Positions 47,488 through 61,297 are shown, numbered from the stretch's first letter. The stretch is 64,000 nt of DNA from IMGVR_UViG_3300036715_004471:372001-436000, one strand, 5' to 3'. The notes: generated by a model not told the origin, from the sequence alone. Program-made: numbers and translations.

Positions 47488-47633
47488 TGAAACAACAAGA
47501 ATTGGAAAGACTATTTTTCGCGTGTTACCATTACACCACACTGCAATGTTTAATTTCTTGGTTGCAGTGGAGGGAATCGGACCCCCTTCTCGTTCTTATA
47601 ATGAAATGTAATCCTTCACAGGCATTTGTTTCA
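47488..47633 (-). ncRNA. Y-RNA-like (YrlA-type) RNA 1 with permuted tRNA domain
   Basis: TGAAACAA/TTGTTTCA closing stem; AATGC..GAAGGATTACAT; T-arm, CACTGCA-ACCA-loop-TGCAGTG, D-arm. Confidence 0.8.
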
Positions 47634-47755
47634 TGGTCTCTCAAGTAGGGTTTACGCCTACAACATCCCTTTAATTCAGGAGTTTTACACATTACTTTTC
47701 ATAATTAAGTTAAGTTAACTGCCCTTAATATGAATTTCACTTAAACTATCGAGAG
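47634..47755 (-). ncRNA. tRNA-like RNA with about 45-nt hairpin inserted in the D-loop
   Basis: CTCTCGA/TTGAGAG-ACCA; GTAGG-CGTAAAC-CCTAC. Confidence 0.55.
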
Positions 47756-47758
47756 ATA

Positions 47759-47833
47759 TGGAGGGTTCGGAGGGACTTGAACCCTCAACAAACTGGTTAA
47801 AAGCCAGCTACTCTGCCATTGAGTTACGAACCC
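47759..47833 (-). tRNA. tRNA-Lys(TTT)
   Basis: GCTGG-CTTTTAA-CCAGT; TCCA. Confidence 0.92.
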
Positions 47834-47835
47834 AT

Positions 47836-48099
47836 TTATACGCCGTTAATCTTCTTAGAAGTCCAATCATGGAAATCAAAAGTCGATTTACACGGAAAAA
47901 CTCCAATCAAAGGATGTGCAATGCAATTATGCACAAACCACCAACTATGATGTTTGTAGACAGGCTTCTCTTCCTGCTTATATCCTTCGATACGTTTATG
48001 AAACCTCATTTCGGCTCCCGACTCATCAGAGTTTGGGAATTCCTTTTCTTCCTTCTTCGGTTTCACTTCGCCATCTTCTTCATCATATTCCCAAAACAT
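47836..48099 (-). CDS. hypothetical protein
   Basis: WFVHNCIAHPL...FHDWT. Confidence 0.5.
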   Translation of the reverse strand: MFWEYDEEDGEVKPKKEEKEFPNSDESGAEMRFHKRIEGYKQEEKPVYKHHSWWFVHNCIAHPLIGVFPCKSTFDFHDWTSKKINGV

Positions 48100-48185
48100 T
48101 TTATTATCTTTCTATGTTTGTGGTTTGGTAGGGCAACGGGTATGTGAAAATATATTTTCACATATCAATATTATCATACATATGT

Positions 48186-48935
48186 ATGTTTCAACTATTT
48201 ACACAAGAGCAATTACAAACTTCCAGATCAAATGATTTGTTACCATTAAAATGTCAACAATGCTCTAAAACATTTTTAATATCTAAAAAGTACATAACAC
48301 AAGTTCTCAATGGTAAATCTAGCCGAGGGTATAAACTACATTTTTGTAGTTCTAAATGTTCACAATTGTCAAGAACTACTTCTGAAATTTTTTCATGCAC
48401 TTTTTGTGATAATCCATTAAAAATGAAATTATCACAAAAACAAAGATCAAAATCTGGAAATATTTTTTGTTCTAAATCGTGCGCAGCTAAATATAATAAC
48501 ACTCATAAAACTAAAGGTAGCAGGCGTTCTAAACTTGAAATTTGGTTAGAGCAACAACTTTTATCATCTTACCAACAATTAAAAATACAATTCAATTGCA
48601 AAGAAACTATCAATTCTGAATTAGATATTTATATTCCAAGTTTAAAATTAGCATTTGAGTTAAATGGCATCTTTCATTATGAGCCAATTTATGGTTCAGA
48701 AAAATTGGCTTCCATTCAAAATAATGATAACAGGAAATTTCAAGCCTGTTTAGAACAAGACATTGAGCTTGTTATTATAGATACGTCATCTCAAAAATAT
48801 TTTAAAGAAAAAACATCACAAAAATATCTTAAAATTATAAAAGATATAATTGATAATAAACTAAATTACTGGTCGTCCCCCCGAGATTCGAACTCGGCAC
48901 CTCTGCCTTATCAGAGCAGCGTTCTAACCAAATGA
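48186..48935 (+). CDS. zinc-finger plus PD-(D/E)xK/Vsr-like endonuclease
   Basis: FCS..C repeats; ELDIYIP..LAFELNG.FHY; D..K...C; 3' end antisense to tRNA-Ile. Confidence 0.8.
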   Translation: MFQLFTQEQLQTSRSNDLLPLKCQQCSKTFLISKKYITQVLNGKSSRGYKLHFCSSKCSQLSRTTSEIFSCTFCDNPLKMKLSQKQRSKSGNIFCSKSCAAKYNNTHKTKGSRRSKLEIWLEQQLLSSYQQLKIQFNCKETINSELDIYIPSLKLAFELNGIFHYEPIYGSEKLASIQNNDNRKFQACLEQDIELVIIDTSSQKYFKEKTSQKYLKIIKDIIDNKLNYWSSPRDSNSAPLPYQSSVLTK

Positions 48936-48946
48936 ACTAGAGGACG
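48870..48946 (-). tRNA. tRNA-Ile(GAT)
   Basis: CTGCT-CTGATAA-GGCAG; ACCA. Confidence 0.92.
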
Positions 48947-48951
48947 GTTAT

Positions 48952-49045
48952 TGTGGATACACAGGGAATCGAACCCTACGCTAGCCTGCTTTCGACTCCT
49001 TTCTACCCACCTTGGTAGGTGGACAATGGCGGGCTCTCTATACCC
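48952..49045 (-). ncRNA. D-armless tRNA-like RNA with Ala identity elements
   Basis: GGGTATA/TGTATCC-A (G3-U70); T-arm TAGGG-TTCGATT-CCCTG. Confidence 0.65.
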
Positions 49046-49049
49046 AAGT

Positions 49050-49127
49050 TGGTGGACACATTGGGAGTCGAACCCAATTTTTCCCGACAATTGTCCGAGC
49101 TTTTCATAGGGACGGGTTACTGTGCCC
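49050..49127 (-). ncRNA. D-armless tRNA-like RNA with Ala identity elements
   Basis: GGGCACA/TGTGTCC-ACCA (G3-U70); T-arm TTGGG-TTCGACT-CCCAA. Confidence 0.7.
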
Positions 49128-49334
49128 AAAATCTTAAACACTAAAAATGAGTACGATATCTTCTCCGCCTTCCTTAATAAAAGCATCATAACTCATACTA
49201 CACGGAGCGTTGAACCAAACATAATTGTTATTATCAATAGTCCATGTCAACTTTCTATCAGGATTAAATCTAACTTCTTTATCATCTTCCATGATATAAG
49301 TGCCAAATTTGTCCATCTTGATCTGTCTTTTCAT

Positions 49335-49410
49335 TGGTGGTACCTAACAGGATCGAACTGTTTTCGTCCGCTTTTCAGACGGCGGTCTTGACCACAAATA
49401 CGAAGGTACC
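49335..49410 (-). tRNA. tRNA-Phe(GAA)
   Basis: Loop CTGAAAA; ACCA. Confidence 0.82.
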
Positions 49411-49419
49411 ATATTTGTC

Positions 49420-49494
49420 TGGTGGCTCCTGTTGGTATCGCGCCAACATTTCCTGCTCTTCAGGCAGGCGCTAATCTATTTCAGCTAAGGAGCC
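49420..49494 (-). tRNA. tRNA-Phe(GAA)
   Basis: CCTGC-CTGAAGA-GCAGG; unusual T-loop CGCGATA. Confidence 0.8.
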
Positions 49495-49499
49495 ATGTT

Positions 49500-49574
49500 G
49501 TAGTTTAATAAGGGCTCGAACCTTAATATATTTTTGTATATCGTTTCCACGAGTACTCATAAACATTAAACTAC
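49500..49574 (-). ncRNA. tRNA-like RNA, T-arm on a 9-bp terminal stem
   Basis: GTAGTTTAA/TTAAACTAC; TAAGG-TTCGAGC-CCTTA. Confidence 0.55.
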
Positions 49575-49652
49575 TGGTCGGGCGAGTGGGGATCGAACCC
49601 ACCTCAAGGTGCTTATAAGACACCCGGATGCAACCAGCTTACCTTTCACCCG
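49575..49652 (-). tRNA. tRNA-Ile(TAT)
   Basis: GGTGT-CTTATAA-GCACC; ACCA. Confidence 0.85.
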
Positions 49653-49850
49653 GTTGACTCACCAAAGATTATAGTGGCAGGCGAAACATTCGAATAAAAA
49701 TGTTGAAGATTTTGGTTTTTCTTTAACCATTACTACTTCATCATCTTCATTATTTTCATAATGACCGCTCACCATTCTCTTGCAACGATGGCATTCATAA
49801 GTAAAATCGCAAGACTTCTCTTCGTTTTCCATGTTGTTTCTTTCTTTGGC

Positions 49851-49926
49851 TGGCAGGTGTAACGGGTGCTGCCCCCGCTTGGTCTTGCTCGACAGGCAAG
49901 TGCAATTGCTGAATTGCTATACACCT
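49851..49926 (-). tRNA. tRNA-Asp(GTC), atypical D and T loops
   Basis: CTTGC-CTGTCGA-GCAAG; T-loop GGCAGCA; GCCA. Confidence 0.78.
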
Positions 49927-49929
49927 ATA

Positions 49930-50004
49930 TGGCACCCCCGAGCGGACTCGAACCGCCCTCATCTGCGTGACAAGCAGACCGCCTCACCCGATGCGTACGG
50001 GGGT
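49930..50004 (-). tRNA. tRNA-Asp(GTC)
   Basis: TCTGC-TTGTCAC-GCAGA; GCCA. Confidence 0.88.
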
Positions 50005-50024
50005 ATGTTATACAATATATCACT

Positions 50025-50426
50025 TTATTCGTAGATGAAAGGTCTTTCTAATCTCCCAATTGTTAAATGAAACCAAGGCTTAAACGGAAAGCCTAACATT
50101 TCTCTGACTGCCGACAATTCTTCTGAATAAACATCAATCCGGGCATGGATTCCATTTTCGAATCTTATCACATGGTTGTAATAAAAATCTACTTCGTATC
50201 CCTCCAACTTACCCCAGGCTGATGGGTCAGTGACGGTCTCGCCGCGAACAACTGAGATATGTGTTCCCCACAACCCTTTTGGATTAGATTCTATTCCATA
50301 TTTTTTCAAATGCCAAGAATAATACTCAGCAATTTGATCGTCACACGAAAGTAAACACCACCAAGGTTCAAATTGTTTAGATCCTTTTTTCAAATCGAAA
50401 TGAAGTGTTCCAGATGAACTAAACAT
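50025..50426 (-). CDS. 2H phosphoesterase-like protein
   Basis: WGTHISVVRGE, FHLTIGR; paralog of 20323..20724. Confidence 0.7.
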   Translation of the reverse strand: MFSSSGTLHFDLKKGSKQFEPWWCLLSCDDQIAEYYSWHLKKYGIESNPKGLWGTHISVVRGETVTDPSAWGKLEGYEVDFYYNHVIRFENGIHARIDVYSEELSAVREMLGFPFKPWFHLTIGRLERPFIYE

Positions 50427-50617
50427 GGCTTGTGTCTTTCAAAAATTTGATGACTAGAAATCGTAAAGACGAAGTTTATTGAATTGAATGACCAATCAAC
50501 AATAATATGGTATTACAGTTTTAACCTTCTGATAATAATACAGGACATTCTATTTATTCTCTTAGAAATGCTTGGAGGTTATTGTTATTATTTATGTAGT
50601 CCTTACTGCATTCATCA

Positions 50618-50690
50618 TGGTCCGCCCCGCCGGGGTTTCACCAGCATTTCCGCCTCATGGCAGCGTCTTGACTATTTAGACGATGGATAG
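50618..50690 (-). ncRNA. degenerate tRNA-like RNA with 4-nt anticodon loop
   Basis: CTGCC-ATGA-GGCGG; weak acceptor stem; ACCA. Confidence 0.45.
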
Positions 50691-50696
50691 ATATTA

Positions 50697-50772
50697 TGGC
50701 GATACGTGTGGGAATCGAACCCACCGTCATCCGCTTAACAGGCGGGCGCTGCACCAAGCCAGCTAACGTACC
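50697..50772 (-). tRNA. tRNA-Asn(GTT)
   Basis: CCGC-CTGTTAA-GCGG; GCCA. Confidence 0.88.
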
Positions 50773-50777
50773 ATTTA

Positions 50778-50864
50778 GTTATGTTAGAGTCGGTTACGGT
50801 AGATCTTTGCCGTCACTCTCTCTAATCCTAGAGTCAAAGTCTAGATGCTCTTACATTACATAAC
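50778..50864 (-). ncRNA. structured RNA carrying a Gln(TTG)-like anticodon arm
   Basis: GTTATGT/ACATAAC closing stem; CTAGA-CTTTGAC-TCTAG; no canonical T-arm. Confidence 0.45.
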
Positions 50865-50897
50865 AAGGTAACATATTTTCGAAGATATGTTTTCCTT

Positions 50898-50973
50898 TGG
50901 CTCATCCCCTCAGATTCGAACTGAGATATCACGAGTTAACAGCCCGCCTCACGACCAATTGTGATAAGGATGA
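50898..50973 (-). tRNA. tRNA-Asn(GTT)
   Basis: GCGGG-CTGTTAA-CTCGT; GCCA. Confidence 0.9.
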
Positions 50974-50975
50974 AT

Positions 50976-51124
50976 ATATTGACGAGAATTGTAAAGATTC
51001 GCTGCGCCCTGCACTTTTGTCTTGCGACCCACTTGTGCTACCACTCATGCGAGTCTTTGAGTGGATGGGATTCGATACCCATACCATCGAGCATTTTCTA
51101 TGTAATCCTTAACGTATTCACTAT
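50976..51124 (-). ncRNA. Y-RNA-like RNA 2 with permuted tRNA domain
   Basis: GAATACG.TAAGGATTACAT; T-arm, CCACTCA/TGAGTGG, D-arm; CAATTCTCGT. Confidence 0.75.
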
Positions 51125-51126
51125 CA

Positions 51127-51282
51127 ACAATAAACTGAGAGGAACAGCTCTGACAATAATAACCCTCTTGCCAGTCAGCGGAGCTCGTTTACGTTTTACT
51201 TCAAACACGAACAAATTGAAGGTTTTCGGTAATCCATTTCAACCGAGACTGTTTTAACCCATTCCTAATCGCAGCTTACTGC
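51127..51282 (-). ncRNA. unknown multibranched ncRNA
   Basis: 11-bp closing stem GCAGTAAGCTG/CAGTTTATTGT plus internal hairpins; begins right after a tRNA CCA. Confidence 0.55.
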
Positions 51283-51358
51283 TGGCTCCGTGGGTACGAT
51301 TCGAACGTACATATCATTGGTTAACAGCCAATTTCATTGCCAGTTATGATACCACGGA
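51283..51358 (-). tRNA. tRNA-Asn(GTT)
   Basis: ATTGG-CTGTTAA-CCAAT; GCCA. Confidence 0.92.
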
Positions 51359-51362
51359 ATGA

Positions 51363-51420
51363 TGCCAGCGATATGAGTTTAAGCCCACATTCTATTGTCC
51401 CCTATATGGACATACTGACA
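51363..51420 (-). ncRNA. 58-nt three-helix mini tRNA-like element
   Basis: TGTCAGT/GCTGGCA; TGTCC-7nt-GGACA; T-like arm. Confidence 0.4.
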
Positions 51421-51467
51421 AAGAAAAGTCAACGAGTATATATATCTAGAATAATAGTCATTGACGT

Positions 51468-51683
51468 CTAGTCTTCAACTTTCATTTCATCGATTATGAG
51501 ATATCTTCCCTGAGATACCCATAACGTTGATCTGTCTCTGGTCCAAGGACTTGCATGTGGTAAGTCCTTGCAATCTTGCTCGATATATTCTTCAACGTAT
51601 TTCTCGGCTGATTCGAAAGATTTGAATGCCTTTTGAATATCACTACCTTCGTAATCATAGCCCAAAGATACTAAAAAGATCAT
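51468..51683 (-). CDS. small hypothetical protein
   Basis: 71-aa ORF inside the tRNA array. Confidence 0.5.
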   Translation of the reverse strand: MIFLVSLGYDYEGSDIQKAFKSFESAEKYVEEYIEQDCKDLPHASPWTRDRSTLWVSQGRYLIIDEMKVED

Positions 51684-51697
51684 AAATCAACTTTCTT

Positions 51698-51773
51698 TGG
51701 TCGGGGACACGGGATTTGAACCCACACCACATGATTCCGGATCACGTACGCTACCAAGTTACGCCAATCCCCG
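51698..51773 (-). tRNA. tRNA-Pro(CGG), C33/A37
   Basis: CGTGA-TCCGGAA-TCATG; C1-G72, ACCA. Confidence 0.82.
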
Positions 51774-51776
51774 ATA

Positions 51777-51850
51777 TCAAAATACGTCAGGAATCGAACC
51801 TGAACTGTGGGGTGATTACCCCAATCCTGCCCTTAGACGACATATTTTGA
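51777..51850 (-). ncRNA. anticodon-less tRNA
   Basis: Normal D and T arms; GGGGT-AATC-ACCCC; 10-bp terminal stem; no CCA. Confidence 0.7.
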
Positions 51851-51851
51851 T

Positions 51852-51927
51852 TGGTCGGGGAACTCAGATTTGAACTGAGACTACATGCTTCCTGAGCACG
51901 GATGCTACCAGATTACAACATTCCCCG
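51852..51927 (-). tRNA. tRNA-Pro(AGG), C33/A37
   Basis: CGTGC-TCAGGAA-GCATG; ACCA. Confidence 0.8.
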
Positions 51928-51930
51928 ATT

Positions 51931-52006
51931 TTGACGACAAAATGAAATAAGTTATTTTGATTCGGTTTATAAGACTGAAATGTAAACCTAATTTCTCATT
52001 CGTCAA
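51931..52006 (-). ncRNA. Y-RNA-like RNA 3 (short)
   Basis: TTGACGA/TCGTCAA; AATGA...TAGGTTTACAT. Confidence 0.72.
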
Positions 52007-52007
52007 T

Positions 52008-52083
52008 TGGTCGGGAATGCCGGATTTGAACCGACACAAGATGATTCCAGATCACCGAGACTACCAAATTATCATAATTCCCG
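52008..52083 (-). tRNA. tRNA-Pro(TGG), C33/A37
   Basis: GGTGA-TCTGGAA-TCATC; ACCA. Confidence 0.82.
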
Positions 52084-52104
52084 AAAATATAACCCCATGG
52101 TTAT

Positions 52105-52189
52105 TGGCGGATCTGGAGAGACTCGAACTCTCGATGGGTTTCCCCGACTGGTTAAGAGCCAGCTGTTATTGCCACTAAACGACAGATCC
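52105..52189 (-). tRNA. tRNA-Lys(CTT) with long variable arm
   Basis: GCTGG-CTCTTAA-CCAGT; GGG-GAAA-CCC extra arm; GCCA. Confidence 0.85.
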
Positions 52190-52197
52190 ATTCTTAA

Positions 52198-52345
52198 AGA
52201 CAACAAAAATTGAAAGTTATCACGCCTTTCGGCTTCAACGCGTTTGCCTTTTCGCCACCACCAACAGTAAGTCGATGGGAGGGACTCGAACCCTCAAACC
52301 TTTTCAGATATTGATTTTAATATGTAAACCTTCTGACATTTGTCT
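52198..52345 (-). ncRNA. Y-RNA-like RNA 4 with permuted tRNA domain
   Basis: AGACAAATGTCAGAAGGTTTACAT; GAGGG-TTCGAGT-CCCTC; CCATCGAC/GTTGGTGG; D-arm; CAATTTTTGTTGTCT. Confidence 0.8.
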
Positions 52346-52354
52346 AGAAGAAGC

Positions 52355-52430
52355 TGGTCGAGCATATTGGATTTGAACCACCCTACATCGCCCCAAACGA
52401 CGTGTGCAACCAGGCTACACTTTATGCTCG
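52355..52430 (-). tRNA. tRNA-Pro(TGG), imperfect T-stem
   Basis: CGTCG-TTTGGGG-CGATG; ACCA. Confidence 0.75.
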
Positions 52431-52777
52431 ATTAATTTTTCTTCATAATGCTCTATTCTGTGGCAATTTGCACACAGAACTTTACATTTAGAAATCTCAT
52501 TCATAATCTTTTCTTTAGACTTACCACTTTGTACTAGATTAGTTACTTCTGTAAGTTTTTGTGTTGGATCTATGTGATGGAAATCTAAAACTCTCCAATC
52601 ACTAATCTCACATTTGAGTAACTTCCTATACTCTATAAACCATTCTCTTTTTTCTTTACGAATACGATATTTCGTGGCTTTATCTTTTTTCTTATAATCT
52701 TCTCTGTGCTTATTGTTTTCATACCATTGTCTCCAATAAGCTCGTCTTTCTTCAACGCTGTTAAATTTCTTAGCCAT
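52415..52777 (-). CDS. HNH endonuclease
   Basis: VLDFHHIDP...EISKCKVLCANCHR; stop inside tRNA-Pro. Confidence 0.82.
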   Translation of the reverse strand: MAKKFNSVEERRAYWRQWYENNKHREDYKKKDKATKYRIRKEKREWFIEYRKLLKCEISDWRVLDFHHIDPTQKLTEVTNLVQSGKSKEKIMNEISKCKVLCANCHRIEHYEEKLIEHKV

Positions 52778-52795
52778 GCTAAGAATATATCAGCT

Positions 52796-52874
52796 TGGTC
52801 GGGCATGCTGGATTTGAACCAGCAAAATCTCCTGTACCCAAAACAGGCGCGATACCAGATTACGCTAATGCCCG
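52796..52874 (-). tRNA. tRNA-Pro(TGG)
   Basis: CCTGT-TTTGGGT-ACAGG; ACCA. Confidence 0.92.
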
Positions 52875-52927
52875 ATCTATATTGTTTCATTCCCGCATCA
52901 AAAAGCGCAGAAACAATTAAACTGCCT

Positions 52928-53014
52928 TGGTCCCCCATAGTGGAATCGAACCACATAGCACATAGGCACTCGTTTTACAGACGAGGGATCCTCCCAGGGA
53001 TCTAGTTACAGGGG
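52928..53014 (-). tRNA. tRNA-Tyr(GTA), possible 8/4 fold
   Basis: CTCGT-CTGTAAA-ACGAG; CCCCTGTA/TATGGGGG; GTGG/CCAC T-stem. Confidence 0.8.
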
Positions 53015-53103
53015 ATAATTTCAACTGATTGTGTGGCGCCCGACATTCAGTAGGAGCACATAATCGCCTGGTGTCCCTACTTATTCAATTGAAGTTAAAC
53101 TTA

Positions 53104-53160
53104 GCTGACAAAAATTGATAAGTTTTTACAACCCAAATGTAAACCTATCGAGCATTCAGC
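53104..53160 (-). ncRNA. Y-RNA-like RNA 5 (minimal, 57 nt)
   Basis: GCTGAATGCTCGATAGGTTTACAT...AACTTATCAATTTTTGTCAGC. Confidence 0.75.
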
Positions 53161-53236
53161 TGGAGTCGAAAGTAGGAATCGAACCTACTGTGACAGTTTT
53201 GCAGACTGTTCCTCAAAGCCATCGAGGACTTTCGAC
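53161..53236 (-). tRNA. tRNA-Cys(GCA)
   Basis: ACAGT-CTGCAAA-ACTGT; TCCA. Confidence 0.88.
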
Positions 53237-53288
53237 TTATCAAGGCTCTCGCCTTGGTCCAACCACCGAAGTGAATTGGGGGATGTTA

Positions 53289-53350
53289 GACGACAAAAAT
53301 TGAATAAGATGTTGTTTATCCTAAAATGTAATCCTATTCTAGCATTCGTC
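53289..53350 (-). ncRNA. Y-RNA-like RNA 6 (minimal)
   Basis: GACGAATGCTAGAATAGGATTACAT...ATCTTATTCAATTTTTGTCGTC. Confidence 0.75.
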
Positions 53351-53351
53351 A

Positions 53352-53425
53352 TGGTTGGGATGTATGGATTCGAACCATAATAAGAAGATTCAAAGTCTTC
53401 TGTCCTGCCGTTGAACGACACCCCA
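53352..53425 (-). tRNA. tRNA-Gln(TTG)
   Basis: GAAGA-CTTTGAA-TCTTC; CCA. Confidence 0.92.
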
Positions 53426-53429
53426 ATAA

Positions 53430-53870
53430 TTATCTACCCAATCTCCACCAACCAAAATCTTTAGCAGTTTTTCTTCTGTGACAATTTGCGCATCTAACAA
53501 CACATTTAGATATTTCTAAAGCTATTTTATCTAAGGATGCGCAATCATTAATCATACTGGAAATGCTGCATTCTTTATTTTCAAGATGATCAAAATCCAA
53601 AACAATCAAATCTTTTTCACCACAATCCACACAACCATTTTTTAGATGTGAAACAATAAAATCTTGTATTAAAGGCTTTAATGTTTCTTTTCTATTATAA
53701 ATACGTTGTTTTACTTTTTCAGTATTAAGTAAGTAATGTTTCTTACCATTTTCTAAATTGCACAACTTACAAAGATTTTGTCTTCCATCTTTAGATAATT
53801 TCTTTTTGTTAAAATCATCTAGCGATTTTTTATCTTTACAGATTGTACAAACTTTGAATTCTTCACTCAT
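53430..53870 (-). CDS. HNH endonuclease
   Basis: CVDCGE...LDFDH...EISKCVVRCANCHR. Confidence 0.88.
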   Translation of the reverse strand: MSEEFKVCTICKDKKSLDDFNKKKLSKDGRQNLCKLCNLENGKKHYLLNTEKVKQRIYNRKETLKPLIQDFIVSHLKNGCVDCGEKDLIVLDFDHLENKECSISSMINDCASLDKIALEISKCVVRCANCHRRKTAKDFGWWRLGR

Positions 53871-53906
53871 AACTTTGATATCAAAGTATTAGTAGTTTTC
53901 AAAGTT

Positions 53907-53978: not shown

Positions 53979-53982
53979 ATAG

Positions 53983-54230: not shown

Positions 54231-54326
54231 ATAATATTTAAAAAAGTACTTCATGAACACCCGCAATTTATAACTGCTCAGTTTGTAACAAGATATCCTT
54301 GTTCACCACACCTTTTTTAAATACAG

Positions 54327-54394
54327 CAGGATGGGAGGGAATCGAACCCTCTTCCAGAGGGTTGGAGGCTCTGTTGCGCCCTGCACTCCATCCT
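54327..54394 (-). tRNA. tRNA-Trp(CCA), short D-arm, no CCA
   Basis: CAGAG-CCTCCAACC-CTCTG; A1-U72, G73. Confidence 0.7.
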
Positions 54395-54396
54395 AT

Positions 54397-54448
54397 ATCG
54401 TCTCTCCGATTGTCATGCCTAGATCGATTGATCGGCGGCATTCCCTTG
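54397..54448 (-). ncRNA. two-hairpin RNA motif, copy 2 (possibly abiF-like)
   Basis: AGGGA-ATGCC...GGCAT-GACA-ATCG-GAGAGA-CGAT. Confidence 0.5.
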
Positions 54449-54605: not shown

Positions 54606-54710
54606 GTATTGACGAATATTGAAGAAATTTTTTCCTGTCACCGGACATCACGGAGTCGAACCGTCACGGATTGTTTCCTATACAATGTAATTCCCTCGAG
54701 CATTCAATAC
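54606..54710 (-). ncRNA. Y-RNA-like RNA 7 (T-arm only)
   Basis: GTATTGAATGCTCGAGGGAATTACAT; ACGG-TTCGACT-CCGT; CAATATTCGTCAATAC. Confidence 0.75.
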
Positions 54711-54799
54711 AAACTTTTTAAAATCTGTGTATCTACTATATCATCTTATTGATATGTTGGAACGTTTTTTGTTTTCTTTCGTCGTCCCAGGTGACTCAT

Positions 54800-54827
54800 A
54801 CTATAACACCGTTGATGGGACCGTCAA
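54800..54827 (-). promoter_or_regulatory. sigma70-like promoter heading the tRNA/ncRNA array
   Basis: TTGACG-N16-TATAGT with TG extension and upstream A-tract. Confidence 0.6.
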
Positions 54828-54933
54828 CATCCGGCTTATTTTTTTCTTTTTCGTCGGCGTCTCCGCCGCGTCGTTGCATCAACCGCCCGGCGACCGTAGT
54901 TGATGGGAGCCGACGGGCGTCCGAAAATTTCAA

Positions 54934-55413: not shown

Positions 55414-55430
55414 GTATACTTTACCAAATC

Positions 55431-56105
55431 TTAAATATCACATTTATGTAAACTAGCAGCAAACTCTTTCAAATCATCTAAACTACCAACAAACACATCA
55501 CGATCAACATTGCCATGAATACCTGGTACATGAAGTATAGTATCACCAGCAGCAGCTTGATCACCACTTCTTTGCCAAAACTTCCAGCTCAAATCTTTCC
55601 AAACACTTGGCACATATTTATCCGGATTTTTCGTATAAGCAGCCAACCATAATGGAAAATGTGACAACCTAGTTATTTCATCCTCGCTTGGATTACCATC
55701 ATGAGAACTCCAAAATGGTCCGCCAGTATAAACTATTGGAGTCACTCCAGTTTGAGATTCTACTCTTTCTAGCCATGCAAGATTCCATTGTACAAATGAT
55801 TCTCCGGCAATTGAAGAAGTTTCTACATCTAAAACTAACATGTCTGTTGGATCAAGATCACCTAAAACAGACAAAAAATGATCTGCCTCAGCTACTGGAT
55901 CATTTTTTAATCTAGCAAAATGATAGGCGCCCCTAACAAAACCACGGTCCTTGACCGCCTGCCAATTCTTCTGAAATTGAGGATCAACAAAAGTAACACC
56001 TTCAGTAGTCTTACAAAATACATAGTTAACCAATTGGGATGCGACAACCGTATCCCAATTGATTGTACCTTGAGCACTTGATACATCAATACCTATTAAA
56101 TCCAT
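55431..56105 (-). CDS. GH25 muramidase (endolysin-like)
   Basis: GIDVS..QG.INW, KTTEG, GAYHF, LDVE, LWLAAY, WKFWQ, VDRD. Confidence 0.92.
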   Translation of the reverse strand: MDLIGIDVSSAQGTINWDTVVASQLVNYVFCKTTEGVTFVDPQFQKNWQAVKDRGFVRGAYHFARLKNDPVAEADHFLSVLGDLDPTDMLVLDVETSSIAGESFVQWNLAWLERVESQTGVTPIVYTGGPFWSSHDGNPSEDEITRLSHFPLWLAAYTKNPDKYVPSVWKDLSWKFWQRSGDQAAAGDTILHVPGIHGNVDRDVFVGSLDDLKEFAASLHKCDI

Positions 56106-56147
56106 ATCTATTCTCCTTAGAGTAGATACGAATAATTTCATAGATTA

Positions 56148-56840
56148 TCAGGGATTAAAAAATCCTGAACCACCACCAACACGGAATCTAGTAGTAGCTG
56201 CTGACGATGTAGCATACAGTTTTTTGGTTCCAGCAGAAGTAGCCTCATATTGCAATGTATTGTCCTTAGCTACCCCTAATGAGGCGCCAGCACCGAAAGC
56301 ATCAATATTAGCTCCCATGAACACAAATTCCCAATTATACTTAGATTTTTGATGATCAATCATTTCCTTAATGCGCTCAAGAGGATATTTCAAATCATTA
56401 AAACGAGGAACAGATCCGTTCTTATAGAATCCTTTAGAAGGCATAGCCACGGCACCATCTTTAAGAAGATGGCTAGAATTTTCCTCACCATCAGTAATGA
56501 TCAAGAATAAAATCTTAGATGGTCTGTCTTCTTCTTTCATATTGGATAATTTTTCGCCCAACTTATCAACAGATAAGCCAACAGCATCTAATAATGCAGT
56601 TCCTCCAGAAGCTTTATAAGTTTTATTGTTTAATAGTGGAACAGAAGCTAGTGGAATATAATCGTGCACGATATCTGGCTTTGTATTGAAAATACAAAGC
56701 GAAACCATTGCTTCACCTGGCGCCGCTTGCTGATCTGTAAGAAATTGGTTCACTCCACCAATAGTATCATTAACTAATGGTGCCATTGAACCACTACCGT
56801 CTAGAAGAATATTAATTGAAGTTAAATTTGGTTTTGTCAT
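56148..56840 (-). CDS. von Willebrand factor A domain protein
   Basis: LDGSGSM MIDAS, GGTALLDA, ITDGEENSS, FMGAN. Confidence 0.9.
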   Translation of the reverse strand: MTKPNLTSINILLDGSGSMAPLVNDTIGGVNQFLTDQQAAPGEAMVSLCIFNTKPDIVHDYIPLASVPLLNNKTYKASGGTALLDAVGLSVDKLGEKLSNMKEEDRPSKILFLIITDGEENSSHLLKDGAVAMPSKGFYKNGSVPRFNDLKYPLERIKEMIDHQKSKYNWEFVFMGANIDAFGAGASLGVAKDNTLQYEATSAGTKKLYATSSAATTRFRVGGGSGFFNP

Positions 56841-57373
56841 ATTATTCCTTTGTTGTTTGACAGATCTTCTATAGCTTCTGTCATATGGTAATATAAAGTA
56901 TCTTTTTTGTCAGCGTATGAGTTTTTATCCTGCATCCACTGTCTTATGATTTTATCTTTTTGTTTTTCAACAGCCTTGAATACCCATTCAGGCGTTTGAT
57001 AATAATTACAATATTCTTGCAATTCAATTGCTGGTAAAGTATATTCAGCTCGTCCCTGAGCCCACATTTTTATCTGTAAGTTGACCGAAGCTTTACAAGT
57101 AAGCAATTCAACCAACAACTGAGGCTCCGAACATGAACCACATTTACCTTCACTATCTATTTTGTAAAAACATATCTTGGCATTCTTGCCGGCTTCAGAA
57201 TAAGTAATATTAAATGGAATTTCTTTTTCTTCTTCATCAAGCCCGGGTAAATCTCCTGGAAATTGAATACCAAAATCAGATTTAATGTCGGATCCAGAAA
57301 AAGTAAAAGTATCTTTTTGAGAGAGATAAAACTGGTAATCTCTTTCAAACTGTGGACTAAATTTGATTTTCAT
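56837..57373 (-). CDS. hypothetical protein
   Basis: 178-aa ORF. Confidence 0.55.
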   Translation of the reverse strand: MKIKFSPQFERDYQFYLSQKDTFTFSGSDIKSDFGIQFPGDLPGLDEEEKEIPFNITYSEAGKNAKICFYKIDSEGKCGSCSEPQLLVELLTCKASVNLQIKMWAQGRAEYTLPAIELQEYCNYYQTPEWVFKAVEKQKDKIIRQWMQDKNSYADKKDTLYYHMTEAIEDLSNNKGII

Positions 57374-57416
57374 AATCTAGTTTCTTAATTTCATATCAAT
57401 AAATACATATATAACT

Positions 57417-58028
57417 ATGAATAGTAGAAAAATAAAAGAAGATATTCTTGGTTATAAATTTGGCAAACTTACTGTTTTAGAATTTATTGGCTCCAAAACA
57501 CGAAACAATAAATACCACAAACTACTTAGATTTTACAAATGTTTATGCGATTGTGGATCTATCTGTGAAAAATTTGGGACAGATTTGAAATCTGGAACAG
57601 TAACAAGTTGTGGTTGTTGGCGTAAAGAAATACAAATAAAAATTCATACCGGTCAAATCTCTAAAATGAGATATGCTGCTGGCGCATCAAAAAGAACAGC
57701 TAAAGATATTTGGAAAAGTTCTTATTCTGATGGATTGCCTCTTGATGATTTTTTAATCTTATCACAACTTAATTGTCATTATTGCGGCGTCCCACCATCA
57801 AATAAATCTAATAAAATTAATCCTAAATCATGCAGTAAAGAATGGTATGATCAAGGTTGGTGGACATACAATGGTTTGGATCGTATTGATAGTTCACAAA
57901 ATCATAATAAAAACAATGTTGTTCCATGTTGTTGGAAATGTAATAGAGGCAAAAGCTCTATGACACATGAAGAATTCATGGAATGGATTTCTCTTGTGTA
58001 CAATCATAATCAGACAAAGAAAACTTAA
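57417..58028 (+). CDS. HNH endonuclease
   Basis: FGKLTV, CLCDCG, SCGC, CHYCG, NGLDRIDS...NVVPCCWKCN. Confidence 0.88.
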   Translation: MNSRKIKEDILGYKFGKLTVLEFIGSKTRNNKYHKLLRFYKCLCDCGSICEKFGTDLKSGTVTSCGCWRKEIQIKIHTGQISKMRYAAGASKRTAKDIWKSSYSDGLPLDDFLILSQLNCHYCGVPPSNKSNKINPKSCSKEWYDQGWWTYNGLDRIDSSQNHNKNNVVPCCWKCNRGKSSMTHEEFMEWISLVYNHNQTKKT

Positions 58029-58260
58029 GTTTATCTTCTCTTGGAAGAGATTTTATTTTTAACTCTATTCTGAGGGCACAACTTTTGTTATCTACTTCAA
58101 AAGATTTGATCAATACAACGGGGAGACGACCTTTTGTATATTTGGCGCCTTTTCTTTTGTTATGGGTCTCAATTCTTTTTTCAAGATTGTTCGTAATTCC
58201 ACAATATAAAGAATCATCAGAACACCTGAGAAGATAAACAAACCATTTCATTCTAAACAA
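57976..58260 (-). CDS. small GIY-YIG nuclease (UPF0213-like)
   Basis: VYLLRC.D.SLYCGITN...R...HN..KGAKYT.GR.PV. Confidence 0.9.
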   Translation of the reverse strand: MFRMKWFVYLLRCSDDSLYCGITNNLEKRIETHNKRKGAKYTKGRLPVVLIKSFEVDNKSCALRIELKIKSLPREDKLKFSLSDYDCTQEKSIP

Positions 58261-59078
58261 TTCTTTTGGAAAATGTTTAAGAAAGGTTTCTCTTCATTGT
58301 TTTCATAAATAGCAAAACATACTTCATCAAAATCTGGAACTTTATCCAAGGCTGCCATAAATGCTTTAGATACCATTTCTGGATCATTTCCAAAAGCACC
58401 ACAACCCCAAGCTCCCAACACTATGTTTCGATGACCATGAGCGCTTGCTATTCTCAAAATCTTAATCGACCTGCGCAATAGGATTTCTTTTAAATCCTTC
58501 GGATCAACTTCATCCAAGGCTCTAACATTTGGAGCCGGAGCTGTAATTACTGAGACAAGAAATGGTTGTTCTAGTAGTAATAAATGTTCATCTCTAATGA
58601 ACGGCACCTTAGGAGAATAAATCATATTATCTGTATACAACGAATTATCTGCTAGAATATTTTCATTATAGAAAATTGGTTTAGTTTTGATACAGGTATA
58701 CAAACCAGAACATCTACACAAGTCTTCTTCTTGAGCCATTGCGCCAGCTAAGAATCCGCCGCCAGGATTTCTGGCAGAAGCAAAATTCAAAACCACTATG
58801 TCTTTACCAGCTTCACAATAACGTCTGGCTGCTTGACCAGACGTTTCTGGAGTAACTTCTACTTTTGCTTCAGTCTTTTTAACTTGAGTATGCGGCTCAT
58901 CTTTATAGAGAATAGTTCCTTTTACAGCTTTGTCAAGGTCGTCAGAAAAATCTACAATAACACTAGATCTTGTAAGATAATTTCCTTCTTTTACAATAGC
59001 AAGAGTTTCTTTACCAATAGCTACATTATTGGTTCGCGCATTCATTAATGCAACGCCATTCTTTTTAATCATATTCAT
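58248..59078 (-). CDS. bacterial PARG-like macrodomain (TIGR02452 type)
   Basis: LNFASARNPGGGFL.GA.AQEEDLCR.S, IYSP.V, VLGAWGCGAFGN. Confidence 0.92.
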   Translation of the reverse strand: MNMIKKNGVALMNARTNNVAIGKETLAIVKEGNYLTRSSVIVDFSDDLDKAVKGTILYKDEPHTQVKKTEAKVEVTPETSGQAARRYCEAGKDIVVLNFASARNPGGGFLAGAMAQEEDLCRCSGLYTCIKTKPIFYNENILADNSLYTDNMIYSPKVPFIRDEHLLLLEQPFLVSVITAPAPNVRALDEVDPKDLKEILLRRSIKILRIASAHGHRNIVLGAWGCGAFGNDPEMVSKAFMAALDKVPDFDEVCFAIYENNEEKPFLNIFQKNCLE

Positions 59079-59694
59079 TCTCGATAATCGTTATAAATTT
59101 CTAATATACCCAATTGGTTAATAATTAAATCATGCCCCAGAATTTCTGGCATATGAAATAAATCTTCCAATGAATCAATTTCTAATTCGTAAATCGGTGG
59201 CTTAGGTTCATTGCCATCATATTCCATTTCTGATGGTACAGCTAATATTCCCAATTTTTCTAGAATCTCTTTTGCGTCGCCCGAAGTGCTAGATACCAAT
59301 ATTTTCATATTATTTTCTTTCAAAACAACGTTTTGAGCCATGTAATAACCAAGAACAGCACTCATTACAATCAAAACAATGAAGTGGTCCTATCAAATTT
59401 CCGGAACATAATGCTTTGATTATTTTCCACCACCTACCAGAAGATTCTAATACTTTCATAAAATCAACCTCCACACCAGCCACAGCCGCCAGGAATATAG
59501 CCACATTTTCTGCAAAGTGTTCTTTTACAATGTCCACAATAACTATATGGTTCTTGAATTAAATCTTTTTTGCACGCAATGCATTTGAGATTTTTCCACC
59601 AATCATTATTTTCTGCCTTATTGTTTTTTAATCTTTGTAGTAAACTTGCTAATATTTTCACACTGAACTCCAAATAATTTTGAACCAGAAACAC

Positions 59695-59729
59695 GATTTG
59701 CCGGCAGGGAATAACCCTGCCGGCAAATC
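59695..59729. terminator. 15-bp hairpin downstream of Ro60
   Basis: GATTTGCCGGCAGGG/CCCTGCCGGCAAATC. Confidence 0.65.
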
Positions 59730-59734
59730 ATATA

Positions 59735-61297
59735 TCAGATTTGAACAGACTCAATGGTTGAGACCCATAGGTCTTTGTTGTTACCAAGTTCAAGGAACTT
59801 TGCAATTACATCAAAAACTTGATCACTAAAACCACCTACGTTAAGGATATTCTCCTTATCGTAAGCTTGAGTAGAGGTATTCGGAGTAAGATCAATACAA
59901 ACAAGCTTTGCTTTCTTGTTACGAGCTTTGAACTCAGTCCAAGCTTTCATCGTAGCGGTACCACGACTTCTGCCTGAATCAACCCAAGACTCGTTATCGC
60001 TTACATAAATGACTAGATCGCCCATGGCTTTTCTACGATTCAACTCTTCCATTGGAAGCGAACAGTTAGTGCCACCTCCGCCAAATCCTGCTAGGATCTT
60101 GGCGTTAGTCATAATTGAATCCATTGGATTCAGCTTATGAGCATGAACTCTAGTATCGAATGGTAATACTTCTACATCAGAATTTCTGCGCATAATAGCT
60201 GCGGCAACCAGGGCTGCCACATCAATACAACGCATCTTGCTGGATACATTTCCACGATTTCCGGTGACCGGAGAATTCATGGATCCAGAAGTATCTACCA
60301 TTACATAAACCTTTTTGTTTTCAAACTCTGGAATGTTCTCCAACGCATGCTCAGCAGCCTTTTGCAAAGCTACAGAAACCTTAGCAGGAACACTTGCATC
60401 CATATTCAAAAACGTAGTGAACAACTGGTACGGGAATACCTTTGCTCTCTTAACTTGCTCCTTATCCTCCAACTTGGCACAGATAAGCCCTAACAGATCA
60501 CGATCTGCTAACACATTATGACGAGCAAATGTGTTAAGGTTCTGTCTAATCTGGTTCCAAGTTGCATTGACTGCAATCTTTTTCCAGTGTTCAGCAGTCA
60601 ATGGTAAAGCCGTAAGCTTTTGGAAAGGTACATGCGGGATTTCTTTTGACATATCTTTCTTGAAGTCTTCAAACTGCTTAACTAGAGCACACAAGTCTTC
60701 CTTTGCATACTCCTTATCTAGCAAGTACCCAAATATAGCAGAACGTTGCTTATTGGTTGGCTTCGGATGAACCAACTTGATGATATCTTGCAATGACGGA
60801 TCATTACCAACATCTGCCGCAAACAACTGCTCATCATTCAAAGATTCCAAATACTTTTGGATTAATCTTTTAGGGCGAGTACCTAAAGACTTACGTCCAG
60901 TAGCCCCTGAACGAATAACCTGCACGAAATTTCTCAACATCTTTGGAGAATCAACTACCTTATCAAAGATTTTGGACAAAAGCTCGGAGTCCTTTCCAGC
61001 AACTACCGCAGCCAAAACCGCAGGCATATCTTTCATTAAACCCTCTTGACGAGAGTATACTGCCAAGCGAGCAACGTACTCAGCCGGCAACTTGTTAGCT
61101 AACTCTAACACTTTCTTAAGTTGATCTTCATCAGATACATAATATGTTCCGTTAAAACAACCAGTCATAGCTAATTGAGCCAATGCGGCTTTGTCAGACA
61201 AACTATAAGCTTGTCCACCAGCATTGTTAACTACATTGGTCGGCTTTACAGCCTTTGAAGACACAAACTTGCTAGCAAATAATTTCTTTGATGACAT
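59735..61297 (-). CDS. rsr: Ro60/TROVE RNA-binding protein with vWA domain
   Basis: NNAGGQAY, LAQLAMTG, GRKSLG, VHPKP, VFPYQL, VDTSGSM, GGTNCSLP, SDNESW. Confidence 0.93.
   Translation of the reverse strand: MSSKKLFASKFVSSKAVKPTNVVNNAGGQAYSLSDKAALAQLAMTGCFNGTYYVSDEDQLKKVLELANKLPAEYVARLAVYSRQEGLMKDMPAVLAAVVAGKDSELLSKIFDKVVDSPKMLRNFVQVIRSGATGRKSLGTRPKRLIQKYLESLNDEQLFAADVGNDPSLQDIIKLVHPKPTNKQRSAIFGYLLDKEYAKEDLCALVKQFEDFKKDMSKEIPHVPFQKLTALPLTAEHWKKIAVNATWNQIRQNLNTFARHNVLADRDLLGLICAKLEDKEQVKRAKVFPYQLFTTFLNMDASVPAKVSVALQKAAEHALENIPEFENKKVYVMVDTSGSMNSPVTGNRGNVSSKMRCIDVAALVAAAIMRRNSDVEVLPFDTRVHAHKLNPMDSIMTNAKILAGFGGGGTNCSLPMEELNRRKAMGDLVIYVSDNESWVDSGRSRGTATMKAWTEFKARNKKAKLVCIDLTPNTSTQAYDKENILNVGGFSDQVFDVIAKFLELGNNKDLWVSTIESVQI

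What the first reader, a model, noticed from the sequence alone, without database searches (positions are those of the whole stretch)
47488..61297. Phage Ro60 with a seven-member modular Y-RNA-like family hidden in the tRNA array
Seen: seven minus-strand elements (47488, 50976, 51931, 52198, 53104, 53289, 54606) share a terminal module: stem1-AAT(G/A)N..stem2(RwAGGwT)-TACAT-[cargo]-stem2'-CA(A/T)T..YGT-stem1'. The stem1 sequences differ but pair in each copy. Cargo ranges from almost nothing (57-76 nt RNAs), to a T-arm only, to a full circularly permuted tRNA domain (T-arm, acceptor hairpin, D-arm). Several start within 0-2 nt of an upstream CCA. A complete TROVE+vWA gene lies 5 kb from the array start. 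Known: bacterial YrlA Y RNAs have this permuted tRNA domain and bind Ro60, tethering it to effectors such as PNPase. Inference: one phage Ro60 is programmed with a panel of interchangeable RNA adaptors or decoys released by tRNA processing, possibly against host tRNA-damage defences. I know of no description of so large and graded a set in one phage.
Basis: partly seen in the sequence, partly recalled or inferred. Interest (0 to 1): 0.92.

Follow-up and report, generated by a model that had tools for sequence, protein, structure and literature searches.

The report
Eight Y RNAs in phage tRNA array
A very large uncultivated phage encodes an Ro60 RNA-binding ring protein and, scattered through its neighbouring tRNA gene array, eight small RNA genes that are diverged members of the known bacterial Y RNA family (YrlA/YrlB), so the finding is real but extends a known system and is not a new one.

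Summary
The minus strand of 47.49-54.71 kb holds eight elements, not seven; the extra one is at 50448-50617. All share a terminal stem, GA-AUGC loop, second stem with a conserved G.U, UACAU, variable cargo, and a CAAU..UUG return strand. The 520-aa ORF at 59735-61297 is an intact Ro60 (TROVE plus vWA with MIDAS).

The shared module is the Ro60-binding end of the known YrlA family. Rfam YrlA aligns full length to two elements but below threshold. The same module occurs in bacterial YrlA genes that pass Rfam's threshold.

In 80 phage and 80 bacterial Ro60 loci the module occurs 128 and 121 times on the Ro60 strand, against 3 and 0 on the other strand. Covariation supports all four helices.

Sets of 2-6 Y RNAs with short, T-arm and full tRNA-like cargo are common beside bacterial Ro60 genes. 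What is unusual here is the number (eight) and their dispersal among tRNAs, 5-12 kb from Ro60, abutting tRNA ends, in a 446-kb phage and its relatives, including Myxococcus phage Mx1.

Function as adaptors or decoys is untested. I rate this a new variant of a known kind, of moderate interest.

The parts
59735..61297 (-). Ro60 (TROVE + vWA) gene, 520 aa, intact
   Evidence: Pfam vWA_Ro60 1.1e-18 and TROVE 1.7e-7. Full-length phmmer matches to PDB 9KOP, 2NVO, 1YVP and 9NEN. MIDAS residues D335, S337, S339, T410 and D434 are invariant in alignment A5.
54606..54710 (-). Y RNA-like element 1 (E54606). First in the array; 56-nt cargo with a T-arm; ends 6 nt before tRNA-Arg.
   Evidence: Descriptor 6+6 bp. 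Model R1 35.5 bits, E 5e-6. Fold recovers both stems. This T-arm class is conserved in relatives and in phage Mx1.
53289..53350 (-). Y RNA-like element 2 (E53289). Short, YrlB-like; exact GACGAAUG motif; starts 1 nt after the CCA of tRNA-Gln.
   Evidence: R1 72.8 bits (a training member). Fold z = -2.8.
53102..53161 (-). Y RNA-like element 3 (E53104). Short; its first base is the terminal A of the CCA of tRNA-Cys.
   Evidence: Weak Rfam YrlB hit, 22 bits. Fold z = -3.4.
52198..52345 (-). Y RNA-like element 4 (E52198). 103-nt cargo: T-arm, 8-bp hairpin and further hairpins; 9 nt after tRNA-Pro and 8 nt before tRNA-Lys.
   Evidence: An ortholog with the same cargo length is in L002.
51931..52006 (-). 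Y RNA-like element 5 (E51931). 26-nt cargo; lies between two tRNA-Pro genes; probably a T-arm-class member that lost its T-arm.
   Evidence: Alignment A6 shows a 30-nt gap relative to orthologs.
50977..51124 (-). Y RNA-like element 6 (E50976). YrlA type: T-arm, 7-bp acceptor-like hairpin, D-arm with a long loop; ends 3 nt before tRNA-Asn.
   Evidence: Rfam YrlA aligns to model positions 1-114 at 23.8 bits. One G-A mismatch in stem 1. The L021 ortholog pairs perfectly.
50448..50617 (-). 123-nt AT-rich cargo without a tRNA-like domain; starts directly after a CCA-ending tRNA-like RNA.
   Evidence: An ortholog with the same ..CTAG-TCATCA return strand is in L017.
47488..47633 (-). Y RNA-like element 8 (E47488). 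YrlA type: T-arm, 7-bp acceptor stem followed by A-CCA in the loop, then U8/G9 and a D-arm; follows a CCA-ending RNA.
   Evidence: Rfam YrlA aligns to positions 1-114 at 25.7 bits. Covariation in A4. Orthologs in L009, L013, L014, L017-L019 and L021.
54800..54827 (-). Candidate promoter of the array (TTGACG, 16 nt, TG-TATAGT), about 90 nt upstream of element 1
   Evidence: Best-scoring sigma-70-like site in 46.5-56 kb, but the number of sites does not exceed shuffles. Inference only.
39691..40037 (-). Phage-encoded bacterial class A RNase P RNA, a possible processing enzyme for the array
   Evidence: Rfam RF00010 at 288 bits. Its identity is shown; its link to Y RNA release is inferred.

Best explanation
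The eight elements are genes for Y RNA-like noncoding RNAs. They are diverged YrlA/YrlB homologs that partner the phage's own Ro60.

Shown: each has the conserved Ro60-binding end, made of the terminal stem, the GA-AUGC / CAAU..UUG internal loop and a second stem with a G.U pair. A variable distal domain is inserted after UACAU. That domain is almost nothing in three copies, a T-arm in one, a permuted tRNA body in two or three, and a long AT-rich insert in one. The elements lie in the same orientation as the tRNAs and abut their ends.

Inferred: they are transcribed with the tRNA array. RNase P cleavage at the 5' end of the next tRNA, and 3' maturation of the preceding tRNA, release them. The phage encodes its own RNase P RNA. 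Each RNA then binds the outer surface of the Ro60 ring and gates it or tethers it to partners. By analogy with D. radiodurans, Salmonella and Thermus phage phiLo, the partner is a host 3'-5' exoribonuclease such as PNPase. The RNP would then handle structured, misfolded or damaged RNA during infection, most plausibly the phage's own large tRNA pool or host RNAs. E47488 has a 7-bp acceptor stem followed by ACCA, so RNase P probably cuts it again into a two-piece RNA with a tRNA-like 3' end, as reported for M. smegmatis YrlA.
For: Motif enrichment and strand bias in the window. Rfam YrlA aligns full length to E47488 and E50976, including the module, T-arm, acceptor stem and D-arm. The same module is found in elements scoring 34-64 bits and in bacterial YrlA above Rfam's gathering score (L248 78 bits, L249 75 bits). 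Co-occurrence with Ro60: 128 elements on the Ro60 strand against 3 on the other in 80 phage loci, and 121 against 0 in 80 bacterial loci. Pairing without circular selection: 57 of 105 5'-anchor sites have perfect 6+6 bp stems, against 3.7% with shuffled hexamers. Covariation: 24 pairs, 91.5% paired against 66% shuffled and 40-52% slid, 22 pairs with compensatory changes, including the T-arm and acceptor helices that were not used for selection; for the short class, 11 of 13 pairs are compensatory. Intact Ro60. Junctions with tRNAs in the window and relatives. Mx1 has the same arrangement. [quoted passage not shown]
Against: There is no expression, end-mapping or binding data. Rfam scores for the window copies (22-26 bits) are far below the gathering scores (69 and 97). 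Single-sequence fold z-scores are modest, from -0.4 to -3.4. The elements lie 5-12 kb from Ro60, beyond the 4 kb used to define YrlA candidates. The promoter call does not exceed chance. No exoribonuclease partner is encoded in the window. The exact GNCGAA motif occurs in only two of the eight copies.
Confidence: 0.78

Rival explanations
1. The RNAs act mainly as free tRNA mimics. They would be competitive inhibitors or sponges for host enzymes that recognise the tRNA elbow or acceptor end, such as defence nucleases, toxins acting on the acceptor end, or processing enzymes. Ro60 would only stabilise them.
For: Two or three copies have a precise permuted tRNA body, and one has an encoded ACCA. 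The window holds tRNA and ADP-ribose related counter-defence-like genes: Thg1, PARG, two ADP-ribosylglycohydrolases and NAMPT. Hughes et al. raised competitive inhibition of an anticodon nuclease by YrlA as a possibility (PMC7790460).
Against: Five of the eight copies have no tRNA body or only a T-arm. None has an anticodon arm. The invariant part of all copies is the Ro60-binding module, and that module tracks Ro60 genes.
Confidence: 0.1
2. The elements are structural punctuation of the tRNA array: spacer hairpins or tRNA-derived relics that guide or survive precursor processing. They would have no function with Ro60.
For: They abut tRNA ends. Phage tRNA clusters are known to carry extra stable RNAs of unknown role, such as T4 species 1 and 2 RNAs (my own knowledge). 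Some copies look degraded: the E50976 mismatch and the cargo loss in E51931.
Against: The same module occurs next to Ro60 in bacteria whose loci have no tRNAs and matches curated YrlA. Compensatory changes maintain both stems across loci with 41-94% Ro60 identity. Most tRNA junctions in the window lack such an element.
Confidence: 0.06
3. The shared motif is a chance or repeat-derived similarity, for example a recent local duplication without function.
For: All copies are paralogs within 7.2 kb. L016 shows four near-identical tandem copies.
Against: The window copies differ in stem sequence while keeping pairing. Ortholog classes are conserved across the clade and in Mx1. Enrichment is 8 against 0.59 expected. 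Strand bias is 128:3 and 121:0.
Confidence: 0.01

Closest known systems
Bacterial YrlA / YrlB Y RNAs with Rsr (Ro60), Rfam RF02553 and RF02565 (Chen et al. 2013, 2014; PMC4201824)
   Same: The 5' GA-AUGC motif (GNCGAAN0-1G), the terminal stem, internal loop and second stem. The permuted tRNA-like domain (T-arm, acceptor-like stem, D-arm) in the long forms and short hairpin forms beside them. Location on the Ro60 strand. A 7-bp acceptor stem with CCA, as in M. smegmatis YrlA, which RNase P cuts.
   Different: Eight copies instead of the two described per species. The copies are dispersed among tRNAs 5-12 kb from Ro60 rather than within 4 kb. Scores are far below Rfam thresholds. One copy has a 123-nt AT-rich cargo with no tRNA feature.
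Thermus phage phiLo Ro60 with Yrl1 and Yrl2 (PMC12135203); mycobacteriophage, CcrColossus and phage G Ro60/Y RNAs (PMC4201824)
   Same: A phage-encoded Ro60 with phage-encoded Y RNA-like partners. For phiLo, binding and a ternary complex with host PNPase were shown.
   Different: Those phages have one or two Y RNAs immediately beside Ro60. Here there is a family of eight inside a tRNA array of a roughly 446-kb phage. Protein identity to phiLo Ro60 is low (E 1e-16).
Myxococcus phage Mx1 (OR576727.2)
   Same: It has the closest cultured Ro60 (48% identity). A tRNA array surrounds Ro60. Two elements carry the same module including UACAU, one of YrlA type and one of T-arm type, each abutting tRNAs.
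   Different: Only two copies were found in the 42 kb examined. The genome is 170 kb. The elements are not annotated in the record.
Extra stable RNAs in phage tRNA clusters (T4 species 1 and 2 RNAs); nematode stem-bulge RNA families (both from my own knowledge)
   Same: Small stable RNAs co-transcribed with and processed from a phage tRNA cluster. A multi-member Y RNA homolog family in one genome.
   Different: The T4 RNAs have no known Ro60 link. The sbRNAs are eukaryotic and are not linked to tRNAs.

Membership tests
YrlA (Rfam RF02553; Chen et al. 2014) | Encoded near a Ro60 ortholog on the same strand (within 4 kb in the original screen) | tested here: inconclusive
   The strand is the same, but the distance is 5.0-12.2 kb. 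In more distant phage and bacterial relatives, elements with the same module sit within about 0.3 kb of Ro60.
YrlA (Rfam RF02553; Chen et al. 2014) | 5' motif GNCGAAN0-1G | tested here: inconclusive
   The motif is exact in E53289 and E51931 (GACGAAUG). The other six have variants: GCUGAAUG, AUUGAAUG, GAUGAAUG, AGUGAAUA and ACAAAUG twice. Changes at the C position are compensated on the 3' strand.
YrlA (Rfam RF02553; Chen et al. 2014) | Terminal 5'/3' stem, asymmetric internal loop, second stem | tested here: met
   Present in all eight copies. Covariation is shown.
YrlA (Rfam RF02553; Chen et al. 2014) | tRNA-like domain: T-arm, acceptor-like stem, D-arm in permuted order | tested here: met
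   Met for E47488 and E50976 and partly for E52198 (T-arm plus hairpin). It is absent from the other five, which therefore resemble YrlB or T-arm-only Y RNAs.
YrlA (Rfam RF02553; Chen et al. 2014) | Score at or above Rfam's gathering threshold (69 bits) | tested here: not met
   Scores are 25.7 and 23.8 bits, although both alignments cover the full model. Elements with the same module reach 34-64 bits in other phage contigs and 71-90 bits in bacteria.
YrlA (Rfam RF02553; Chen et al. 2014) | Bound by Ro60 in vivo; tRNA-type base modifications | not testable with these tools
   This needs a pull-down or EMSA and modification mapping.
YrlB (Rfam RF02565) | Short Ro60-bound hairpin Y RNA encoded beside YrlA; score at or above 97 bits | tested here: not met
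   E53104 scores 22.1 bits. The Rfam model is built from Salmonella sequences only, per PMC4201824. The architecture (module plus short apical hairpin) is the same for E53289, E53104 and E51931.
Ro60 / TROVE protein family | TROVE HEAT-repeat ring plus C-terminal vWA domain with a MIDAS motif | tested here: met
   Both Pfam domains are above cut-off. Matches to solved Ro60 structures cover residues 20-506. The DxSxS, T and D residues are invariant in A5.
RYPER-type Ro60 / Y RNA / PNPase complex | Y RNA tethers Ro60 to PNPase | not testable with these tools
   No PNPase gene is in the window. The partner would be a host enzyme. This step is inference from PMC4201824 and PMC12135203.

The most novel reading that the evidence does not exclude
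The eight Y RNAs are not redundant. Each distal module would direct the single phage Ro60 ring to a different partner or substrate: exoribonucleases, RNase P, the CCA-adding enzyme, tRNA-modifying enzymes or tRNA-targeting defence proteins. Production would be coupled stoichiometrically to tRNA expression through shared processing, including a phage-encoded RNase P RNA. That would amount to a phage-borne, modular RNA surveillance or counter-defence platform. It could include a two-piece Y RNA with a mature ACCA end that might even be charged.
Probability: 0.2. Interest if true: 0.8.

Novelty: new variant of a known kind. Interest (0 to 1): 0.5.

Why it matters
How the distal modules of bacterial Y RNAs set the function of Ro60 is still open, and only a few Y RNAs have been studied. 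This phage clade offers a natural series: one Ro60 and eight RNAs that share the binding end but differ in cargo, with ortholog classes conserved across many genomes. A cultured relative, Mx1 on Myxococcus, carries two of the classes, so pull-downs, end mapping and deletions are feasible. The survey also shows that multi-copy, graded Y RNA sets are widespread beside Ro60 genes in phages and bacteria, and that current Rfam models miss most of them. The link to tRNA arrays, and to a phage RNase P RNA, suggests that Ro60 RNPs belong to the translation and tRNA-maintenance toolkit of very large phages.

Tried and rejected
1. Covariance model R1, built from 21 short members. It finds the short copies and E54606 but not the copies with 94-123 nt cargo, so I used a descriptor script for the inventory.

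2. Exact 5'-half motif scan of viral contigs. Most of the 117 stretches are chance matches. Only those that also passed the full descriptor were used.

3. Alignment A3 used wrongly converted minus-strand coordinates for L070, L127 and L132. I discarded it and redid it as A4.

4. Two AGGTTTACAT-like or anchor sites outside the array (38705 and 31244) lack the return strand and lie in coding sequence, so I rejected them. The looser descriptor's hits at 48273(+), 62638(-) and 18592(-) match the shuffle background of about 1.6 per window.

5. Mycobacteriophage ScoobyDoobyDoo as a yardstick. There was no YrlA hit at E <= 0.01, and its Ro60 is not in a tRNA array, so it was uninformative.

6. Two review articles (PMC10870794, PMC6047535) and the supplements of PMC4201824 were not held. 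The maximum number of Y RNAs previously reported per genome could therefore not be checked beyond the main texts.

7. The promoter and terminator scan gave no enrichment over shuffles.
Full report
**What is in the window**

ARAGORN finds 38 tRNA genes, all on the minus strand, between 21.3 and 54.6 kb. Rfam adds a class A RNase P RNA at 39691-40037. The ORF at 59735-61297 (minus strand, 520 aa) matches Pfam vWA_Ro60 (1e-18) and TROVE (2e-7). It aligns over residues 20-506 to solved Ro60 structures: phage phiLo 9KOP, D. radiodurans 2NVO, Xenopus 1YVP and 9NEN. Its MIDAS residues are invariant among relatives.

The window is identical to part of IMG/VR contig 3300036715_004471, which is 446,541 bp long. 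Close relatives are contigs of up to 480 kb. No DNA-level match exists among deposited phages. The nearest cultured Ro60 is that of Myxococcus phage Mx1, at 48% identity.

Other genes in the window fit a large phage with translation, tRNA and NAD/ADP-ribose functions:
- a Thg1-like enzyme
- EF-Ts
- NAMPT
- two ADP-ribosylglycohydrolases
- a PARG next to Ro60
- R2K ATP-grasp proteins
- a weak 2H phosphoesterase match inside the array

**Checking the observation**

The shared plan is:
- a terminal stem ending in GA
- AUGC(N)
- a short linker
- a second stem containing AGG paired with CUU, which gives a G.U pair
- UACAU
- variable cargo
- the return strand of stem 2
- CAAU (or UCAU, CGAU)
- a U-rich linker ending in G
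- the return strand of stem 1

AGGWYTACAT occurs 8 times, all on the minus strand, against 0.59 expected. An anchor scan and a descriptor script give eight full elements, not seven. The additional one is at 50448-50617 and has a 123-nt AT-rich cargo. Minimum-free-energy folds recover the two stems in seven of the eight. E50976 has one G-A mismatch in stem 1.

A covariance model of the short class, run without filters, and Rfam scans of 20-55 kb find no further copies. The family is therefore confined to 47.49-54.71 kb, the end of the array nearest Ro60.

**What the module is**

Rfam YrlA aligns end to end (model positions 1-114) to E47488 (25.7 bits) and E50976 (23.8 bits). YrlB aligns weakly to E53104. 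They place the cargo on the T-arm, the acceptor-like stem and the D-arm.

The 5' motif is the published GNCGAAN0-1G (PMC4201824). It is exact in two copies. In the others it varies, with compensating changes on the partner strand.

The scores are far below Rfam's thresholds, so I looked for intermediates. Other phage contigs with the same module score 34-64 bits. Bacterial loci whose descriptor hits include UACAU score above the gathering threshold: Haloferula L248 7859-7984 at 78 bits, and Adhaeretor L249 7860-8056 at 75 bits. The module is therefore the ordinary Ro60-binding end of YrlA-type Y RNAs in this branch of the Ro60 family.

**Association with Ro60**

I scanned both strands with one descriptor, so the opposite strand serves as an internal control.

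| Set of Ro60 loci | Ro60 identity to window | Bases scanned | Elements on Ro60 strand | Elements on other strand | Loci with at least one |
|---|---|---|---|---|---|
| 80 phage loci | 41-94% | 1.5 Mb | 128 | 3 | 51 |
| 80 bacterial or MAG loci | 50-56% | 0.89 Mb | 121 | 0 | 55 |

Among the phage loci, 34 have two or more elements.

In the distant relatives the elements sit within a few hundred bases of Ro60, often in tandem. In the window's own clade they lie 3-10 kb downstream, among tRNAs. Mx1 has two copies inside its tRNA array.

**Structure**

The descriptor selects for pairing, so I ran a test that does not. I took every AATG..TACAT site with no regard to the return strand. There are 105 such sites on the Ro60 strand and 20 on the other. 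Of the 105, 57 have perfect 6+6 bp partners at the right spacing, against 3.7% when the hexamers are shuffled.

RNAalifold on 21 short members predicts both stems, and 11 of 13 pairs show compensatory changes. On 15 long members it predicts four helices: stem 1, stem 2, the T-arm and the acceptor-like stem. Of the cells, 91.5% are paired, against 66% in shuffles and 40-52% when partners are slid by 1-3 columns. Compensatory changes occur in 22 of 24 pairs. The T-arm and acceptor helices were not used to pick the sequences. The G.U in stem 2 is kept in 11 of 15.

**Cargo classes**

- **Short hairpins** (59-76 nt): E53104, E53289, E51931.
- **T-arm class:** E54606. This class has orthologs across the clade and in Mx1. 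E51931 shares the stem, the unusual UUCAU linker and the position before tRNA-Pro with this class but lacks 30 nt including the T-arm, so cargo has been lost within one lineage.
- **Full permuted tRNA bodies:** E47488 and E50976. E52198 has a T-arm, an 8-bp hairpin and other hairpins.
- **Long AT-rich cargo:** the element at 50448-50617.

In E47488 the order is T-arm, 7-nt acceptor 3' strand, A, CCA, a 13-nt loop, the acceptor 5' strand, U and G, then the D-arm. The NCCA is conserved in 7 of 15 long members. M. smegmatis YrlA, which also has a 7-bp acceptor stem, is cut by RNase P and carries CCA in vivo (PMC4201824).

This graded series is not special to the phage. Many bacterial loci have a short element, one with about 50 nt of cargo, and one with 80-100 nt, in tandem after Ro60. 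One locus (L264) has six.

**Junctions with tRNAs**

Five of the eight elements begin 0-2 nt after a CCA. Three follow called tRNAs (Gln, Cys, Pro). Two follow uncalled CCA-ending structured RNAs. Four elements end 3-8 nt before the next tRNA. The same holds in the relatives.

This fits co-transcription and release by tRNA 5' and 3' processing. That is inference; there are no expression data. The best promoter-like site is about 90 nt upstream of the first element, but the scan as a whole does not exceed chance.

**Mechanism**

Shown:
- an intact Ro60 gene
- eight genes with the conserved Ro60-binding module and covarying stems
- strict co-orientation and co-occurrence with Ro60
- precise abutment to tRNAs

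Inferred from characterised systems: the RNAs bind Ro60 and gate it or tether it to partners such as PNPase (D. radiodurans and Salmonella in PMC4201824; phiLo in PMC12135203), and the distal domains choose the partners.

A role in coping with tRNA damage is suggested only by context and by the Salmonella rsr-yrlBA-rtcBA operon, which responds to tRNA fragments (PMC7790460). The permuted tRNA bodies lack an anticodon arm, so they cannot be substrates of anticodon nucleases. Competitive binding remains possible.

**Novelty**

Phage Ro60 with Y RNAs has been described for mycobacteriophages, CcrColossus, phage G and phiLo (PMC4201824, PMC12135203). I found no paper describing multi-copy Y RNA families within phage tRNA arrays, but two relevant reviews were not available.

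New here:
- eight copies, the most seen in this survey (six was the next highest)
- their dispersal through a tRNA array at a distance from Ro60
- conservation of this layout in a clade of very large phages and in Mx1
- the broader finding that current models miss most such RNAs

I rate it a new variant of a known kind, with interest of about 0.5.

Noticed in passing
window 39691-40037 (-): A complete bacterial class A RNase P RNA (288 bits) is encoded by the phage inside its tRNA region. I found no paper on phage-encoded RNase P RNA in one literature query.
   Followed up: partly
window 50618-50696 (-) and 47633-47758 (-); L001 about 7870-7945 and 8715-8790: Structured RNAs that end in ACCA but are not called as tRNAs lie directly upstream of two Y RNA-like elements. 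The 79-nt one folds into a cloverleaf-like shape and resembles two Mx1 sequences (GTCGTCTAA..AAGACG .. AATGCTGG .. CCAACCA).
   Followed up: partly
window 54325-54400 (-): A tRNA-like element with a canonical T-arm and an 8-10 bp terminal stem but no D-arm. It gives weak mascRNA and tmRNA hits, and ARAGORN does not call it.
   Followed up: partly
window 53237-53288 (-): Two stable hairpins lie between E53289 and tRNA-Cys, the first followed by ACCA (fold z = -2.5). It may be a minihelix-like processing substrate.
   Followed up: partly
window 53430-53870 (-) and 52415-52777 (-): Small ORFs sit between tRNAs and have Cys-rich, HNH-like C-termini (..CANCH..). They have no Pfam hit and are probably homing endonucleases of the array.
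   Followed up: partly
window 58248-59078, 10566-11477, 33928-34488, 12804-14192, 3542-4339, 21837-22841, 50025-50426: A microbial PARG lies next to Ro60. The window also holds two ADP-ribosylglycohydrolases, NAMPT, a Thg1-like tRNA-His guanylyltransferase, EF-Ts, and a weak 2H phosphoesterase match inside the array. This is a cluster of NAD/ADP-ribose and tRNA-maintenance functions.
   Followed up: partly
window about 51195-51215 (-): CCTTCAATTTGTTCGTG resembles the 3' return strand of the module but has no matching 5' half. It may be a remnant of a ninth element.
   Followed up: no
L016 14618-15100 (+): Four near-identical short Y RNA-like copies lie in tandem with a 142-nt period, which indicates recent local amplification in a relative.
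   Followed up: no
L001 about 6806, 7340, 7741 (+): In Mx1 the motif GATCAACGCAGTAAGTAG recurs just after several tRNAs. Mx1 also encodes a tmRNA at L001 9732-10109 (118 bits).
   Followed up: no
L229, L257, L243, L253, L269, L247 (genome contigs): Several 'bacterial' MAG contigs carry Ro60 plus 22-32 tRNAs in 13 kb, with dispersed Y RNA-like elements. They look like phage contigs binned into MAGs, or prophages.
   Followed up: no
window 51778-51848 (-): ARAGORN calls a tRNA with an undetermined, two-base anticodon between two tRNA-Pro genes.
   Followed up: no
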